A stretch of 57,449 bases of DNA, the filler included, from Sluysia triapertura (lineage: Eukaryota), in the NCBI GenBank assembly GCA_046118255.1. It is 5 parts of 5 records of this genome, joined end to end, with 100 filler letters (N's around TTAATTAATTAA, not from the genome) between each part and the next. Parts side by side here need not be neighbours in the genome. Positions count along the whole stretch, not along the records: positions 34,617 to 45,735 come from JBJNIA010188643.1; 4 more parts are not named here. One strand, 5' to 3'. Shown piece after piece: positions 35,960 through 40,900 of the stretch. Under the pieces are notes generated by a model. That model ran no database searches and had not been told where the DNA came from. It was given only the letters and a program-made list of their open reading frames with translations. How positions within the stretch are numbered: position 1 is the first letter of the stretch; each line of letters starts with the position of its first letter. The position numbers were made by a program, and so were the translations under genes.

Positions 35960-38814
35960 TCATAATTCCTCCAATTTAAATATAGAATTATCGGTTTGAA
36001 TTTTTTTAATTTTTTCATAAATCTTTACTGCCGGGCCTAATTTAATATTTAACTCTGTAAGTACATCAATTCGTTTCATCAACAATAAGCAAGCACCATC
36101 GATTTCTTGTTCACGGAATGAATTTGATTGACTACTGAAACCTTCCTCTGACAACCAGTCACAAACGTGTTCTACCGTCCATTTCGTGACATCAGAAGGG
36201 CGCAGCGTTGGTGCATGAATTATTGGAAATTGCGCATGTGTTGTGGAAGTGGATATTTGACTAGGGATAGTAGATGAACTTGTATTCATTGCACTGGACA
36301 TTGAATGGGAATGTTTTGATGAATTCACATTTTCTTTATCCAACGAAAAATTTCTGTAATGTTATTAAGTAAAATTTTAATTTTAAGCAATTTCACGAAT
36401 AACAAGCAATAGCCAATAAAATTATGATATTGAGAAAGTAAAACAAATATTCAAAATCATTGTGAAAGAGGTAGCTAACTAATTTTTTCAACTCATTGAC
36501 AAGTCAAAATCTTTACTATTATTAAATTATTTTTAATGTAAAAATCATCTTTTTTGAAATCCGAATATACTACAGTAACAATAGGTCTGAATTATTAAAT
36601 GTTTACTTTCATCTTGAAAGAGGTACTACAAATTCAATCTACTAGAAACTTATATAATCAAATTTCTAATGTATTTATATATTGTTCTTGTTTAAACTTA
36701 AAATCAAACCACGTAATTTCTTAAACTACTTTTAATAGTAATCAATAATTACGAAAAAGTAAACAAAACTTACTTCACTGCAGAATCATTCAGAGAACTT
36801 TCTGTTTTTATTTTATCCAGATTATTATCATTACCTTTCTTGTTATTGTGTAATTTAGTTTCTATATTTTCATTATTTTGATTCTGATTAATGATATTAT
36901 TATTGTTGTTGTTGTTATTATTATTACTATTATTATTATTATTATTATTATTATTGGTGGTATTATTACCAGATGTCGATATGTGTTGATTATTACTATT
37001 ATTACAAAGAACTTGTTTAACAGATTCGTCAGTTCGTATTCGAAAACCTTCATCGTAGCAATTACAACAAATCCACGCTGAATTTCTGGAAATAGGTTCC
37101 TGGATCTTAGGATTGTGACAATTTGAGTGAAAGCCTTTATCACAACCATCACAAATATATACCGGTTCCTAAAGAATTATTTTAAGCATATATTATATTA
37201 TTAATATTTGTTACTTATTATGATAAGTAGCTTATATTATAAAAATATATTCTAACTTTTGAACTTTTATCATTACAAATTGAGCAAGTTTTACAAGCAC
37301 TGCATTGCCACAACGATTGCCGAGCACGTTCGGTTAATTCTGGCCAATAATGAAGGCAAGAAGGATGAACTAAAATGAATATATTTATTGTTTGAAATTG
37401 TTCATATAACTTTTATTTCTTATTATCATTCTAATAATCAAATCCAAAACTATAAGTAGCATTTTAAAACAAATATAATTGAATTTTACAATCAGAAATG
37501 ATAGTACACAAAATAATTAATATCGGAATTTATTTTTATATTTTAATATTTTTTGATTTTTGGCAAGTCACTTGAGAAAGATTTTGAAATTTTTGATTAC
37601 CAAAAATAATAATGATTGTGAGCCTAATGAATTTTATTTCGTTATCCATTTGTAATTTAAGTATGCTCTATTTAATGCATACTCAATTTCAATCTTCATA
37701 AAAATCTAGCTTTATTAAGCTCAAATAAAAAAATTATAGTTTCACATAAAATTTTATCAATTGTATAAACAATGTTCTCAAACTGAAGGAAGAGGATTAA
37801 TTTAATTCATTTTCTAAAAATAGAAACAAACCTTTGATTGGACAATCTCTGCAATATAGAAATTTTTCAAAATCTGTCTCAGGCAAGCGACATTCAGAGC
37901 ATAAATCGATAATACACGTAGATCCAACTGCTGGAATTGTTTGATCTGAATTCGTAACACTAATCACTGAACATGCCGATGAGTCAAGCGTGCTTGTGCT
38001 TATGGGAGGACCACCACCACCACCACAAATAATTGATGAAGTTGATGTTTGATTTTGTTCACTGATACAACACGACGAATCCAATTTAGGTTTCTATTAT
38101 TAGTAAATTCATATGAAAAAAGAAAAATTTTTAGCGAAAAGGATGATTCATTATACTTGTATAAATATCATGTGACCCTAAACAGTTATATAATAAACAC
38201 ACATACACACATACACACACTAATTTAAAAAACATTAACGGGTTATAACATAATCAAACAAATACGAAGTGAAAATGGAAAAACACTTAGCGCAATTTTA
38301 ATAATATACATAATCAGTTGGATGAATTTATAAAATAATAATTTATAAAAAAGAATCATAAAAAGGAAAGAAAAATCATATTTATGCATAAGAGGGAGAG
38401 AAACTAAATTTCCTGTAAAAATCTTTCAGTAACAAGGCGATTTTGAAATATCCAATCAAATTAAAACTAATTTATTGACAAAATCTCAAATGGATTTGAT
38501 CAAACCAATTAGATTTCATCAGTCATTAAAAACTTTGTATGCATTTCTAATTAAATTGAAATGACTGGAAAAATGAAATATAAATAAATAATAGTCTATC
38601 ACTGGTGTGGTTACTATGTAAAATTAAAAACACCCTCAATTATCACATACCTTTCCTGAATTTGCACCGTTGAAATTGTTAGTTTCACTTGGATCACATC
38701 GCTTATTCTTTGAACCAGGTGGCCGTCCACGTCTACTACTTTTTATCACATTATTACTGCTACTATTACCATTATTATTATTAATATTATTATTACTGCT
38801 ATTACTACTACTAC

Positions 38815-38856
<42 letters not shown>

Positions 38857-40900
38857 TGCCATTATTAATACTTATGGAAGGTGACGATGCAGTTGTCATA
38901 GTTGGTTTAGAAGATGATAATGATGGACTTGTCATGCTAGTCACAGATATTGAGGAAGTTAATGACGGTTTTATATCGTCAATTAAAGACACAAGATTAC
39001 TTTGAAATGATGATTGGTTGCTACTATTATTATAATTATTATCATCACTGGATATTGCTACTATTTGTGACGCTGTTTTTGAATATACAGTATTGGAATT
39101 TATGGAATTGTTCAATATCGGAGGAGTGGAAGGTATTAAAGAAATTGAAGAGGCAGGAATAGAATTAGTTGTTATAGAAACCGGTGTTACCATAGCAGTG
39201 TTTGTTACCAAAGGAACTGGCGATGCAGCCATGATGTTAGTTGCAGCATTTAGTGAAGTGACTAGAGTTGTTGTTGGAGTAAACACATTAGTAGTACTGT
39301 TTAGTGTAGCTTGAGAGCAGTGTGCCACTGGTCCGACTGTGGGTTCATATTTAACAAATGCAATGTGAGCAGCGGGGGAAGTATGAGTAGATGCTTGTTT
39401 AGGAAGAATTGGACTTGGAGTATTTAGCTGGTTGTTAGAAGTTGGTGCAATAATTGTTGGAACAATTTGTGGAGCAGTTGCATAAGCTGTGGTAATCATA
39501 TGGGTAGGTTGGTGTTGAATAATAGTAGGTTGAATATTAGGAGCCATACCTATGCTTGTTGTCTGATGAATTGTTTGAGTCATTGGAGCTGCTGCAATTG
39601 ATTTATTATGAAGTGGTTTGTGACTGCAATTAATAAACGAAGTGGCTGAATTTAGGCTAGAAGCTGAACCAGTTAAAGATGTTTTACGAGCTTGAATAGC
39701 AGTTGTTTTTCGAGCCTTCTTTTCTCCCGTTTCATCAATTATAAATGTGTTGTCTGGACGTCGAATTAATTTTCCATACGACGCTTCACGTTCCAAGTAA
39801 TGACGCAATTGCAGTTTGGACAACTCTGTTGAATTTGGACCGCCTGTTCGTTGTAAAGCCTGTTCAATCTCACTAATCGAATAACCAACTTTAACTGACA
39901 TATTCGATTGATTTATGCAACCATCTGATGTTCTATTGCGATCTAAATATTTGAAAGCTTCCAAAATTCGATTAGTAACACTAGGTGGATTAATTATACC
40001 ACCACCATTAGCACTATTCTTACGCCACTTATACGGATTCCTGTAGCTTATATTACCTTTATAATCTACACACACTACAGCTCCAATGTCCGCCAACTTA
40101 TTCAAGCATTGTACAGTATCTTCTGGAGGGATATTGTGATAACGCTTCATTAAAGTTGATATCCTATCAGCATCAGGTCGAGCCTTGCGCTCTCTTAATT
40201 TGTCAATAGCCTCTAAGATCCAATCTCTATAATAACTACTACTAATCGCAGTAGTTAAACTACCAGACCCGCTGGGCATATTTAGTACATTTGTACCTAA
40301 AGTTGACGGAATATTCGGTGGAGTACTTGTGATATTAGAAGATACATTTTGAGATTGAGACAAAGGTTTAGGACTCACTTGATTACTAGGCAAATTAGTT
40401 GATGTATTAATTGTCGGTCGCATTTGTATTGGGGCAAAAGTAGTGTGACTTGAAGCTGAACCAACTGAAGCTAAATTAGTTTGTGACACTGTTAATTCCG
40501 GGGGTTTCGCAGCAATAGGAGCTAACGTAAGAGTAATTGGAGCATTCTGTTGCCTATTCTGTGTACTTATATAGTGGTTATTGGGTTGAATAGCAAAAGT
40601 ATTCTGTTGTTGCAAACCTGCAACGGTTGATGGTAATAATCTCGATCCTGAATTAATGATGGCACCATTGCTTTGACTAGGTAATCCCAATGTTGGAGTA
40701 GTTTGTTGCAAAATTGTAACTACAGGTTTCGGTTGAATTTGCAATGGAGCACTTGTTGGTGATATTGTTATGGGAACTGATACTGAATTCATTGACTTGG
40801 CTATTGTATTCTGAGTTGTACCTGTAGCAACGACCATATTTGCTACTAAATTACTGCTGGAAACACAATTTATATTGTTGTTACATATTTGCTTAGACAT
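35960..40900 (-). CDS. SAMD1: SAMD1/atherin-like chromatin reader with a KAT6-type N-terminal module: WH + H15-like WH + AT-hook + double PHD + SAM (1137 aa, 5 coding exons)
   Basis: Exons 40900-38651, 38093-37832, 37369-37257, 37168-36774 and 36353-35960; all introns GT-AG with compatible phases (0,1,0,2); 3414 nt total. WH: YRDWILEAIDKLRERKARPDADRI...VDYKGNISYRN (SAMD1-like). Second WH: RILEAF...GYSISEIEQAL...QLRHYLEREASYGKL. AT-hook: RRGRPPGS. DPF: CSEC...CRDC..VHPSC...WQCSACKTCSIC...ICDGCDKGFHSNC...WICCNC. SAM: WTVEHVCDWL...FREQEIDGACLLLMKRIDVLTELNIKLGPAVKIY. The symbol indicates similarity; orthology is untested. Confidence 0.92.

What the first reader, a model, noticed from the sequence alone, without database searches (positions are those of the whole stretch)
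35960..40900. Complete SAMD1/KAT6 hybrid chromatin reader: WH-WH-AT-hook-double PHD-SAM with no acetyltransferase domain
Seen: five GT-AG-joined exons splice in frame into 1137 aa; the double PHD finger is split over exons 2-4 and is mostly invisible in the ORF track. Established: vertebrate SAMD1 has only WH + SAM (a repressor binding unmethylated CpG), whereas KAT6A/B (MOZ/MORF, fly Enok) have WH1 + H15-like WH2 + double PHD + MYST. This protein keeps the KAT6 targeting module in KAT6 order, but its WH is SAMD1-like (RKARP...YKGxISYRN) and a SAMD1/SAMD13-type SAM sits where MYST would be. Inference: it may retain an ancestral SAMD1 architecture from which vertebrates lost WH2 and DPF, and could act as a non-catalytic, SAM-polymerising reader of CpG DNA and acylated H3K14 that competes with KAT6. 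Similar invertebrate proteins may already sit in databases under KAT6-like or atherin names; I cannot check.
Basis: partly seen in the sequence, partly recalled or inferred. Interest (0 to 1): 0.85.

Follow-up and report, generated by a model that had tools for sequence, protein, structure and literature searches.

The report
Flatworm SAMD1 relative with double PHD
This is an intact five-exon flatworm gene for a non-enzymatic chromatin-binding protein of a family found from corals to amphioxus, which looks like the ancestral form of vertebrate SAMD1 before it lost its histone-reading double PHD finger.

Summary
A minus-strand gene of five GT-AG exons (40900-35960) reads in frame for 1137 codons. 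It encodes a SAMD1-type winged helix (WH1), a second winged helix (WH2), an AT-hook, a double PHD finger (DPF) split over exons 2-4, and a SAMD1-type SAM. No MYST sequence lies in the piece.

Intron positions and phases (0,1,0,2), and the 113-nt exon 3, match the annotated Schistosoma bovis orthologue. One contig in the only public run holding the locus skips exactly intron 4.

The architecture is not peculiar to this genome. The same WH1-WH2-DPF-SAM protein, usually 430-750 aa, occurs in cnidarians, molluscs, annelids, brachiopods, arthropods, echinoderms, hemichordates and amphioxus. Databases auto-name it "KAT6A/B-like", "atherin" or "ubi-d4-like".

With KAT6 as outgroup, vertebrate SAMD1 forms one clade inside this family. 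Its Pfam "small helical domain" is homologous to WH2, so vertebrates lost the DPF only.

WH1 keeps 8 of 9 SAMD1 DNA-contact residues. In flatworms the DPF keeps the H3R2 aspartates but has lost two wall residues of the H3K14-acyl pocket.

Caveats: there is no RNA evidence for junctions 1-3, and one run contig carries a +1-nt difference near the end of exon 4.

The gene is an ordinary orthologue of an uncharacterised but widespread family.

The parts
38651..40900 (-). Exon 1 (750 codons, ends in phase 0). Holds a Q/N/S/T-rich N-terminal extension, WH1, WH2, a low-complexity linker with poly-Asn, and the AT-hook. The ATG is at 40900-40898, with an in-frame TAA two codons upstream.
40037..40225 (-). 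WH1: SAMD1-type winged helix (exon-1 aa 226-288). It keeps the equivalents of SAMD1 DNA-contact residues R43, R45, K46, R48, Y87, K88, S92 and R94. R56 is replaced by T.
   Evidence: Pfam PF21524 2.5e-24. PDB 6lui 1.2e-15 against KAT6A 7y43 1.8e-6. Residue list from PMC8115922.
39704..39991 (-). WH2: a second winged helix (exon-1 aa ~304-399), of linker-histone (H15) type by transitive homology.
   Evidence: The AF2 model gives H-H-H-beta-beta. VIA Z is 7.4-7.7 to H1x/H1.8/H5 and 6.5 to MORF WH2 8e4v, but 8.3-8.9 to ORC/Cdc6 WH. hhalign to the WH2 of non-flatworm members gives 98%, E 2.1e-13. Several of those members pass Pfam Linker_histone. There is no direct Pfam hit in the window.
38708..38734 (-). 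AT-hook RRGRPPGSK (exon-1 aa 723-731).
   Evidence: Seen in the sequence. RGRPP is present in all 19 flatworm homologues and aligns with them.
38094..38650 (-). Intron 1 (GT..AG, phase 0). Without splicing, the ORF runs 4 codons further (VCDN) to a stop.
   Evidence: The intron lies at the same position in S. bovis (EK|KIKVE against window GK|KPKLD).
37832..38093 (-). Exon 2 (262 nt). Holds a linker and the first half of PHD1 (CSEC...CRDC), and ends in phase 1.
37370..37831 (-). Intron 2 (GT..AG, phase 1), lying between CxxC and His of PHD1.
   Evidence: Same position and phase in S. bovis. The Mesocestoides model P0013 reads through at the same point, compared with P0012.
37257..37369 (-). 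Exon 3 (113 nt). Holds the rest of PHD1 and the first CxxC of PHD2.
   Evidence: S. bovis exon 3 is also 113 nt.
37169..37256 (-). Intron 3 (GT..AG, phase 0).
36774..37168 (-). Exon 4 (395 nt). Holds the rest of PHD2 and an Asn-rich linker, and ends in phase 2.
   Evidence: Pfam PHD 5.5e-6.
37058..37901 (-). Double PHD finger (DPF) from first to last zinc ligand, interrupted by introns 2 and 3. All Cys/His ligands are present, as are the H3R2 aspartate pair (CDGCD) and the equivalents of W257 and L242. The equivalents of MOZ F211, I260 and P301/G303 are changed.
   Evidence: Alignment A4. Orthologue DPF against PDB: KAT6A 1.7e-20. Family profile: KAT6A 130, DPF3 123, KAT6B 122.6, DPF2 116, PHF10 102 bits.
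36354..36773 (-). Intron 4 (GTAAGT..AG, phase 2, 420 nt). It is skipped exactly by one contig of run X1, at about the same depth as the contig that contains the intron.
   Evidence: table 5 (joint 36353->36774, depth 16) and table 8 (record 4, 36324-36803, depth 17.2)
35960..36353 (-). Exon 5, with stop TGA at 35962-35960. Holds a linker and the SAM domain.
36002..36184 (-). SAMD1-type SAM domain.
   Evidence: Pfam SAM_1 2.6e-12. PDB SAMD1 SAM 6luk 1.2e-17 and 6luj 2.1e-17, against liprin 2.8e-12 and PHC3 2.9e-9.

Best explanation
The locus is the flatworm orthologue of an old, widespread but uncharacterised animal gene family, the DPF-bearing form of SAMD1.

The protein has no enzyme domain. 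It is most likely a multivalent chromatin anchor and scaffold, working as follows:
- WH1 binds CpG-containing DNA in the SAMD1 manner.
- WH2, a linker-histone-like winged helix, and the AT-hook add non-specific contacts with nucleosomal or AT-rich DNA.
- The double PHD finger holds the N-terminal tail of histone H3.
- The C-terminal SAM self-associates, and probably pairs with SAM domains of MBT-type repressors, so that many weak contacts add up on chromatin.

Shown here: the gene structure, the domain identities, orthology across Metazoa, and the nesting of vertebrate SAMD1 inside the family.

Inferred only: every binding activity and the repressive output. In flatworms the H3K14-acyl pocket of the DPF has been remodelled, so its histone specificity probably differs from that of KAT6 and BAF45.
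For: Gene model. Conserved intron positions, phases and 113-nt exon 3 in S. bovis. Intron-4 joint. Collinear tblastn of five orthologues on all exons.

Domains:
- Pfam on single exons.
- WH1 to SAMD1 6lui at 1.2e-15, with 8 of 9 DNA-contact residues kept.
- SAM to SAMD1 6luk at 1.2e-17.
- DPF class.
- WH2 fold and homology to H15-positive members.

Family breadth:
- phmmer over 1.84 billion representatives gave 78 hits below 1e-30.
- The domain map shows 53 WH1-DPF-SAM and 13 WH1-WH2-DPF-SAM representatives.
- Named members come from Cnidaria, Lophotrochozoa, Ecdysozoa, Echinodermata, Hemichordata and Cephalochordata.

Tree with KAT6 outgroup: SAMD1 plus the family is a 100/100 clade, vertebrate SAMD1 is 100/99, and the flatworm clade, which holds both window rows, is 97/94.

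Vertebrate SHD is homologous to WH2.
Against: - No RNA run holds the locus, so junctions E1/E2, E2/E3 and E3/E4 rest on frame, ligand spacing and comparison only.
- The single X1 contig over the end of exon 4 carries a net +1 nt at 36804/36805. If that is the true functional sequence, it gives TGA 12 nt before the donor and puts the SAM exon out of frame. The window's version, however, has the same phase-2 intron as S. bovis.
- Many database models of flatworm orthologues are WH-only or DPF-SAM-only fragments.
- WH2 has no direct Pfam hit in the window, and its best fold matches are generic winged helices.
- Two of the four H3K14-acyl pocket residues and the P-x-G of the H3A1 site are not conserved in flatworms.
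- No functional data exist for any family member in the literature searched.
Confidence: 0.8

Rival explanations
1. Two products rather than one. Exon 1 alone would give a 754-aa WH1-WH2-AT-hook protein ending at the stop just inside intron 1. The DPF-SAM exons would then belong to another transcript, or be joined only in a minority isoform.
For: The exon-1 ORF closes 4 codons after the donor. There is no read evidence for the E1/E2 junction. Many database entries of flatworm orthologues are WH-only (P0001, P0003, P0005, P0010, P0011) or DPF-SAM-only (P0020, P0021, P0024).
Against: - Exons 2-4 hold no Met codon.
- The conserved K-[KR]-x-K-[LIV]-[ED] motif is rebuilt across the junction (by eye).
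- S. bovis, Sparganum, Opisthorchis and Mesocestoides models join all domains, with the intron at the same place.
- Outside flatworms, all domains sit on 1.6-3 kb contigs that are too short to hold introns.
Confidence: 0.07
2. The copy in this organism is polymorphic or partly decayed. One haplotype, or a frameshifted retrocopy lacking intron 4, would encode a protein ending after PHD2 without the SAM domain.
For: One search shows three things. The only X1 contig over 36774-36864 has a net +1 nt at 36804/5. There is a 1-nt deletion at 36001 in the C-terminal tail. An intron-4-less form stands at about half depth while introns 1-3 show no joint.
Against: - The window sequence itself is open through all five exons.
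- Its intron-4 phase equals that of S. bovis.
- The SAM exon is well conserved.
- Logan contigs keep only one branch of a bubble, so absence of the window allele in X1 is not shown.
Confidence: 0.1
3. It is a KAT6 (MOZ/MORF/Enok) gene whose MYST exons lie outside the piece or were missed.
For: The N-terminal module WH1-H15-DPF has the KAT6 order. Databases name relatives 'KAT6B-like'.
Against: - The reading frame ends in a SAM domain and a stop.
- No MYST-like sequence lies in the 11 kb piece.
- True KAT6 representatives carry zf-MYST and MOZ_SAS and form a separate 100/100 clade.
- Orthologues in more than ten phyla end in SAM.
Confidence: 0.02
4. It is a BAF45/PHF10-type SWI/SNF subunit that happens to carry a SAM domain.
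For: The DPF scores nearly as well to DPF3 and DPF2 as to KAT6A. UniRef names one orthologue 'PHD finger protein 10', and some are named 'ubi-d4-like'.
Against: No Requiem, C2H2 or SAY/INI1-binding region is found by Pfam in the window exons or the orthologues. WH1 and SAM are SAMD1-type.
Confidence: 0.03

Closest known systems
Vertebrate SAMD1 (atherin); structures 6LUI (WH-DNA) and 6LUJ/6LUK (SAM)
   Same: - SAMD1-type WH1 with 8 of 9 DNA-contact residues kept.
- SAMD1-type C-terminal SAM.
- An intervening WH2/SHD element.
- The same clade in the WH1+SAM tree.
   Different: Vertebrate SAMD1 has no double PHD finger and no canonical AT-hook. Its WH2 survives only as the 'small helical domain'. 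The flatworm protein has a ~220-aa N-terminal extension and long low-complexity linkers. SAMD1 was described as vertebrate-specific (PMC8115922).
KAT6A/KAT6B (MOZ/MORF) and Drosophila Enok
   Same: The N-terminal targeting module has the same order: CpG-type WH1, H15-like WH2, DPF. The DPF of the family scores best to KAT6A.
   Different: There is no zf-MYST/MOZ_SAS acetyltransferase domain, and a SAM domain closes the protein instead. WH1 is much closer to SAMD1's (60 against 30 bits). KAT6 forms a separate clade.
Uncharacterised invertebrate proteins auto-named 'histone acetyltransferase KAT6A/B-like', 'atherin' or 'ubi-d4-like'. Examples: Lingula anatina XP_013413244.1, Branchiostoma belcheri P0201, Saccoglossus P0183, Montipora XP_068677105.1.
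   Same: They have the same architecture, SAMD1_WH + Linker_histone/WH2 + two PHD + SAM. They are orthologous by tree and by WH2 profile.
   Different: They are compact (430-600 aa), with WH1 at the N-terminus. They keep the aromatic residue (F/Y) and the Ile of the H3K14-acyl pocket, and the P-x-G-K-W of the H3A1 site. Flatworms, including the window, have changed all of these.
BAF45 (DPF1-3) and PHF10 double PHD fingers
   Same: The same DPF class, with the zinc-ligand pattern, the acidic H3R2 pocket and the conserved Trp/Leu floor of the acyl pocket.
   Different: The surrounding domains differ, with no Requiem, C2H2 or SAY region. The review PMC8538644 counts six mammalian DPF proteins; this is a seventh lineage, one that vertebrates lack.

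Membership tests
SAMD1 family | N-terminal SAMD1-type winged helix (PF21524) with the CpG-contacting residues | tested here: met
   Pfam 85.6 bits against a cutoff of 24.5. PDB 6lui 1.2e-15. R43, R45, K46, R48, Y87, K88, S92 and R94 equivalents are kept; R56 is T.
SAMD1 family | C-terminal SAM most similar to the SAMD1 SAM | tested here: met
   SAM_1 2.6e-12. SAMD1 SAM 67 bits against the next non-SAMD1 protein (liprin-beta) at 50 bits.
SAMD1 family | Groups with SAMD1 rather than KAT6 in a tree | tested here: met
   WH1+SAM tree with KAT6 outgroup. The ingroup is 100/100. Window rows E1 and E5 both fall in the flatworm clade at 97/94.
SAMD1 family | SAMD1 small helical domain (PF24971) between WH and SAM | tested here: inconclusive
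   No direct Pfam hit in the window. Vertebrate SHD against invertebrate WH2: hhalign 96.3%, E 1.6e-9. Against flatworm WH2 only 67.5%, E 5e-5. Flatworm WH2 against invertebrate WH2: 98%.
SAMD1 family | Binds unmethylated CpG DNA, polymerises, and recruits L3MBTL3/KDM1A | not testable with these tools
   Needs biochemistry.
KAT6 (MOZ/MORF/Enok) | MYST acetyltransferase domain (PF17772 + PF01853) | tested here: not met
   No Pfam hit on any exon. tblastn of two MYST domains on the piece gives a best E of 2.4. True KAT6 representatives have both domains.
KAT6 (MOZ/MORF/Enok) | WH1 - H15-like WH2 - DPF module in this order | tested here: met
DPF class of double PHD fingers | Two consecutive PHD fingers with a full zinc-ligand pattern and DPF-specific sequence | tested here: met
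   The window pieces tile the DPF of orthologues without gaps. The orthologue and the family profile hit KAT6A/B, DPF2/3 and PHF10 far above other PHDs (130-102 bits against 71 or less). The joined window DPF was not searched.
DPF class of double PHD fingers | Acidic pocket for H3R2 (MOZ D282, D285) | tested here: met
   CDGCD in the window and CDACD in the family. Residues from PMC3902925.
DPF class of double PHD fingers | Hydrophobic H3K14-acyl pocket (MOZ F211, L242, W257, I260) | tested here: not met
   Window: E, L, W, S. Other flatworms have C/R/H at 211 and S/A/T at 260. Non-flatworm members keep F/Y and mostly I (residues).
Linker-histone (H15) winged helix, for WH2 | Match to PF00538 or a specific fold match | tested here: inconclusive
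   No Pfam hit in the window. Orthologous WH2 of Actinia, Montipora, Tubulanus, Glandiceps, Anneissia and Lingula pass the cutoff (24.4-34.3 bits against 22.4) and are homologous to the flatworm WH2. Fold Z is 7.4-7.7 to H1/H5, but ORC/Cdc6 WH scores higher.
BAF45/PHF10 SWI/SNF subunits | Requiem/C2H2 or SAY N-terminal region | tested here: not met
   Absent from Pfam results for the window exons and ten family members.

The most novel reading that the evidence does not exclude
SAMD1 is not a vertebrate invention. It would be the DPF-less remnant of an ancient eumetazoan WH1-H15-DPF-SAM reader, a seventh DPF lineage and the non-catalytic sister of the KAT6 targeting module. In invertebrates this protein would occupy the same CpG/H3-tail sites as KAT6 and oppose it through SAM-driven polymerisation and recruitment of MBT repressors. 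Flatworms, with AT-rich genomes, would have retuned its DPF away from H3K14 acylation.
Probability: 0.3. Interest if true: 0.7.

Novelty: new variant of a known kind. Interest (0 to 1): 0.45.

Why it matters
SAMD1 is treated in the literature as a vertebrate-specific CpG-island repressor made of a WH and a SAM domain. The evidence here changes that picture in two ways. It descends from a much older animal protein that also carried a linker-histone-like domain and a histone-reading double PHD finger. It also shares its whole targeting module with the KAT6 acetyltransferases.

That gives a concrete evolutionary frame for how SAMD1 and KAT6 come to sit at the same CpG islands. It adds a seventh lineage to the small DPF reader class. 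It also offers tractable invertebrate models, such as planarians, schistosomes, Lingula, amphioxus and corals, for testing how DNA reading, histone reading and SAM polymerisation cooperate.

For genome annotation, it flags hundreds of 450-600 aa proteins that are misnamed 'histone acetyltransferase KAT6-like' although they have no acetyltransferase domain.

The window's gene itself is an ordinary member of this family.

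Tried and rejected
- RNA evidence: the look-up of sequencing runs found no RNA run, only one run of unknown kind that behaves like DNA. Read laying gave one informative joint and no support for junctions 1-3.
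- Direct sequence detection of WH2 failed in Pfam, in PDB by phmmer and in PDB by the flatworm profile. It was resolved only by structure prediction and profile-profile comparison.
- Foldseek on the two-domain model gave no hit below E 0.001.
- Word-indexed homology searches from the window and from the SAM region returned flatworms only. Breadth came from the exhaustive search and from a slowly evolving query.
- One literature query was badly framed and uninformative. Four others found no paper on invertebrate SAMD1 or on SAMD1 with a DPF.
- A DPF tree to decide 'KAT6-like or BAF45-like' was not built, because no BAF45 or PHF10 sequences were available by reference. PDB bit scores were used instead and do not discriminate.
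- A KAT6 identity was rejected (no MYST), as was a BAF45/PHF10 identity.
- No tRNA or Rfam family lies in the piece.
- A separate KAT6 gene in the same genome could not be looked for, because only this piece is available.

Full report
**1. What is in the sequence**

The piece (34617-45735) is very AT-rich, at 16-40% GC, with the highest values in the large exon. On the minus strand a 754-codon ORF starts at ATG 40900.

I read the minus strand directly and placed five exons:
- E1 40900-38651
- E2 38093-37832
- E3 37369-37257
- E4 37168-36774
- E5 36353-35963, followed by TGA

Every intron begins GT and ends AG; intron 4 begins GTAAGT. The phases are 0, 1, 0 and 2. In-frame translations of each exon are open.

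**2. Domains, exon by exon**

- Pfam finds SAMD1_WH in E1 (aa 226-288, 2.5e-24), a PHD finger in E4 (5.5e-6) and SAM_1 in E5 (2.6e-12). It finds no MYST family on any exon.
- Against solved structures, the E1 winged helix matches human SAMD1 WH (6lui) at 1.2e-15 and KAT6A WH1 (7y43) at 1.8e-6.
- The SAM exon matches the SAMD1 SAM (6luk, 6luj) at about 1e-17. That is well ahead of liprin, polyhomeotic, L3MBTL3 and SARM1.
- Mapping the 6lui alignment onto the residues that contact DNA (PMC8115922) shows R43, R45, K46, R48, Y87, K88, S92 and R94 conserved in the window. R56 is replaced by Thr.
- An AT-hook core (RRGRPPGSK) lies at the end of E1. RGRPP is present in all 19 flatworm homologues retrieved.

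**3. Second winged helix (WH2)**

No sequence search detected WH2 directly.

An AlphaFold2 model of E1 aa 215-410, built with 17 flatworm sequences, gives two separate helix-helix-helix-hairpin units. Structure searches place the first unit on SAMD1, KAT6A and ZMYND11 WH. They place the second on winged helices in general:
- ORC/Cdc6 WH, Z 8.3-8.9
- linker histones H1x, H1.8 and H5, Z 7.4-7.7
- MORF WH2, Z 6.5

So the fold alone is not specific. The link to H15 comes from homology. The flatworm WH2 profile matches the WH2 profile of non-flatworm family members at 98% probability, E 2.1e-13. Several of those members pass Pfam's Linker_histone threshold: Actinia 34.3 bits, Montipora 31.7, Tubulanus 30, Anneissia 25.5, Glandiceps 25 and Lingula 24.4.

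**4. The double PHD finger (DPF)**

The Schistosoma orthologue's DPF hits the following, with ordinary PHD fingers far below:

| Target | E-value |
|---|---|
| KAT6A | 1.7e-20 |
| KAT6B | about 1e-19 |
| DPF3 | 8.5e-19 |
| DPF2 | about 8e-18 |
| PHF10 | 1.4e-14 |

A profile of 15 family DPFs gives KAT6A 130 bits, DPF3 123, KAT6B 122.6, DPF2 116 and PHF10 102, then drops to 71 for KMT2D. It is therefore a true DPF. 'KAT6-type' is not distinguished from 'BAF45-type'.

The window pieces tile the DPF with the same spacing as the orthologues across both junctions:
- CRDC-PIK(V)-HPSC in the window against CKDC-GLNA-HPTC in the orthologue
- CNDKSSK|EPVYICDGCD in the window against CNSSEYK|SDLIICDACD in the orthologue

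I compared positions using the MOZ residue lists (PMC3902925; PMC8538644):
- The H3R2 aspartates are kept, as are the Trp/Leu floor of the acyl-lysine pocket.
- The wall residues F211 and I260 are E and S in the window, and C/R/H and S/A/T in other flatworms.
- The P-x-G-x-W of the H3A1 site is replaced, with a two-residue insertion.
- Non-flatworm members keep F/Y, mostly Ile, and P-x-G-K-W.

Reading of acylated H3K14 is therefore plausible for the family but doubtful for flatworms. This is inference only.

**5. Support for the splice junctions**

(a) E2, E3 and E4 contain no Met codon, so the DPF can only be translated from an upstream exon.

(b) I rebuilt the annotated S. bovis orthologue exactly from its locus. 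It has five exons, intron phases 0,1,0,2 at the same protein positions, and an exon 3 of exactly 113 nt, as in the window. The Mesocestoides model P0013 differs from P0012 by read-through at the intron-2 position.

(c) The conserved K-[KR]-x-K-[LIV]-[ED] motif after the AT-hook is rebuilt across E1|E2: GK|KPKLD in the window against EK|KIKVE and EK|RPKLE. This was judged by eye.

(d) In the only public run holding the locus (X1), one contig joins 36774 to 36353 with GT..AG ends on the minus strand, which is exactly intron 4. Its depth is 16, beside the intron-containing contig at depth 17.2.

The run looks like DNA, because depth is even over exons and introns, and introns 1-3 show no joint. 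The joined form may therefore be an intron-loss allele or a 3' retrocopy rather than mRNA. Either origin requires that this intron is removed precisely from the transcript.

tblastn of five orthologues hits all exons in order, and two MYST domains hit nothing.

**6. An unresolved discrepancy**

The single X1 contig covering 36774-36864 has a net +1 nt at 36804/36805 relative to the window. With that base, exon 4 would run into TGA 12 nt before the donor, and the SAM exon would be out of frame.

A 1-nt deletion in an A7 run at 36001 affects only the last 13 codons, after the SAM domain. All other contigs shown (exon 1, exons 2-3, intron 4) are identical to the window.

The window's version has the same phase-2 intron as S. 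bovis, which favours it as the functional sequence. I cannot tell whether X1 shows a second haplotype, a decayed retrocopy that won bubble-popping, or an error.

**7. The family**

A first word-indexed search found only flatworm proteins. Full-length models from Schistosoma, Heterobilharzia, Sparganum, Mesocestoides and Opisthorchis carry SAMD1_WH + PHD + SAM.

An exhaustive phmmer search of 1.84 billion representatives, using the Mesocestoides orthologue, gave 551 hits below 1e-10 and 78 below 1e-30.

Mapping the four domains on the best 150 hits shows:
- 53 representatives with WH1-DPF-SAM
- 13 with WH1-WH2-DPF-SAM
- 22 with WH1-SAM
- 11 with WH1-DPF

The WH1-DPF proteins I checked have zf-MYST, and four of the five also MOZ_SAS, so they are KAT6.

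Names recovered for members come from:
- Cnidaria: Montipora, Actinia
- Brachiopoda: Lingula, two copies
- Mollusca: chiton, gastropods, bivalves, cephalopods
- Annelida: Owenia, Ridgeia
- Nemertea: Tubulanus
- Bryozoa: Watersipora
- Chelicerata: horseshoe crabs, ticks, spiders, scorpions, mites
- Myriapoda: Strigamia
- Insecta: Bemisia, Ephemera, Ceutorhynchus
- Crustacea: Lepeophtheirus, krill
- Echinodermata: many species
- Hemichordata: Saccoglossus, Glandiceps
- Cephalochordata: Branchiostoma belcheri

Their automatic names are 'histone acetyltransferase KAT6A/B-like', 'atherin', 'ubi-d4-like' or 'uncharacterized'. Atlas clusters tell the same story. Many members sit on 1.6-3 kb contigs that can hold no introns, so the architecture is contiguous in transcripts of other animals.

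**8. Relation to SAMD1 and KAT6**

I built a maximum-likelihood tree of WH1+SAM. KAT6 WH1 was the outgroup, and the window's E1 and E5 were entered as separate rows. It gives:
- a 100/100 split between KAT6 and everything with a SAM
- a 97/94 flatworm clade holding both window rows
- vertebrate SAMD1 (shark, lungfish, teleosts; WH1-SAM) as one 100/99 clade inside a poorly resolved set of DPF-bearing proteins that includes cnidarians, amphioxus, echinoderms and hemichordates

A 90-row quick tree agrees.

No invertebrate with a vertebrate-like DPF-less SAMD1, and no vertebrate with DPF+SAM, appeared among the hits. The outgroup also has the DPF in the same place. The economical reading is therefore a single loss of the DPF on the vertebrate stem.

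Vertebrate SAMD1 also carries Pfam SAMD1_SHD. That model hits the WH2 region of amphioxus and hemichordate members. The vertebrate SHD profile matches the invertebrate WH2 profile at 96.3%, E 1.6e-9. So WH2 was not lost but reduced.

The SAMD1 paper calls the protein vertebrate-specific (PMC8115922). The KAT6A paper groups SAMD1, KAT6A/B and ZMYND11 WH domains but does not mention this family. Four literature searches found no description of it.

**9. How it most likely works (inference from characterised relatives)**

- WH1 binds CpG-containing DNA through the end of helix 1 and the beta-hairpin, as in SAMD1.
- WH2 and the AT-hook add DNA or nucleosome contacts, as MORF WH2 does at the dyad (PMC9908889).
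- The DPF holds the H3 N-terminus through the R2 pocket.
- The SAM oligomerises and may pair with MBT-protein SAMs, as in SAMD1-L3MBTL3 (PMC11969672).

With no catalytic domain, the protein would act as a multivalent anchor or scaffold, probably repressive. None of this was tested.

**10. Verdict**

The gene is not an oddity of this genome. It is one fast-evolving orthologue of a pan-metazoan family that already sits in databases, misnamed and unstudied. Interest is moderate and lies at the family level.

Left out by rule: any search or fold of the joined 1137-aa protein.

Noticed in passing
window 36354-36773: Run X1 holds both an intron-4-containing contig (depth 17.2) and a contig that skips exactly this intron (depth 16). 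Introns 1-3 show no such joint, and depth is even over exons and introns. This suggests a genomic polymorphism for presence or absence of the intron, or a 5'-truncated retrocopy, rather than mRNA.
   Followed up: partly
window 36804-36805, 36001, 35992, 36026, 35945, 35952, 35917: X1 contigs differ from the window in several places. There is a net +1 nt near the end of exon 4, which is frame-breaking if real. There is a 1-nt deletion in an A7 run in the last 13 codons. There are also substitutions and a 3-nt deletion in the coding tail and 3' UTR. All other contigs shown are identical to the window.
   Followed up: partly
proteins P0127, P0116, P0141 (vertebrate SAMD1) against alignment A3: Pfam's 'SAMD1 small helical domain' (PF24971) is homologous to helices 2-3 and the hairpin of the H15-like WH2 of invertebrate family members. 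It looks like a reduced winged helix.
   Followed up: yes
window 40901-40906: An AG dinucleotide lies directly before the ATG, and an in-frame TAA two codons upstream. This is compatible with a 5'-UTR intron or a trans-splice acceptor immediately before the start codon, as is common in flatworms.
   Followed up: no
P0013 against P0012 (Mesocestoides corti): The 1245-aa model contains about 320 residues of apparent intron read-through, inserted exactly at the intron-2 position inside PHD1. The 926-aa model is the clean one.
   Followed up: partly
Potamilus streckersoni CHS0354_042128-042131; Lingula, Tubulanus, Patella, Argonauta: Several lophotrochozoans carry two or more copies of the family. 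In Potamilus there are four consecutively numbered genes on one contig, which suggests tandem duplication.
   Followed up: no
P0068 (514 aa) and P0085 (850 aa): These have odd architectures among the hits: WH1-WH2-WH1-WH2, and three WH1 domains without DPF or SAM. Their origin is unknown.
   Followed up: no
window 41600-45100: A stretch of 16-21% GC with short AT-rich tandem repeats. It has no ORF over 76 aa, no tRNA and no Rfam match, and appears to be intergenic.
   Followed up: partly
database names of family members: Hundreds of 430-600 aa proteins without any MYST domain are named 'histone acetyltransferase KAT6A/B(-like)' by automatic pipelines. UniRef titles say 'Histone acetyltransferase'. 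This is a systematic mis-annotation.
   Followed up: partly
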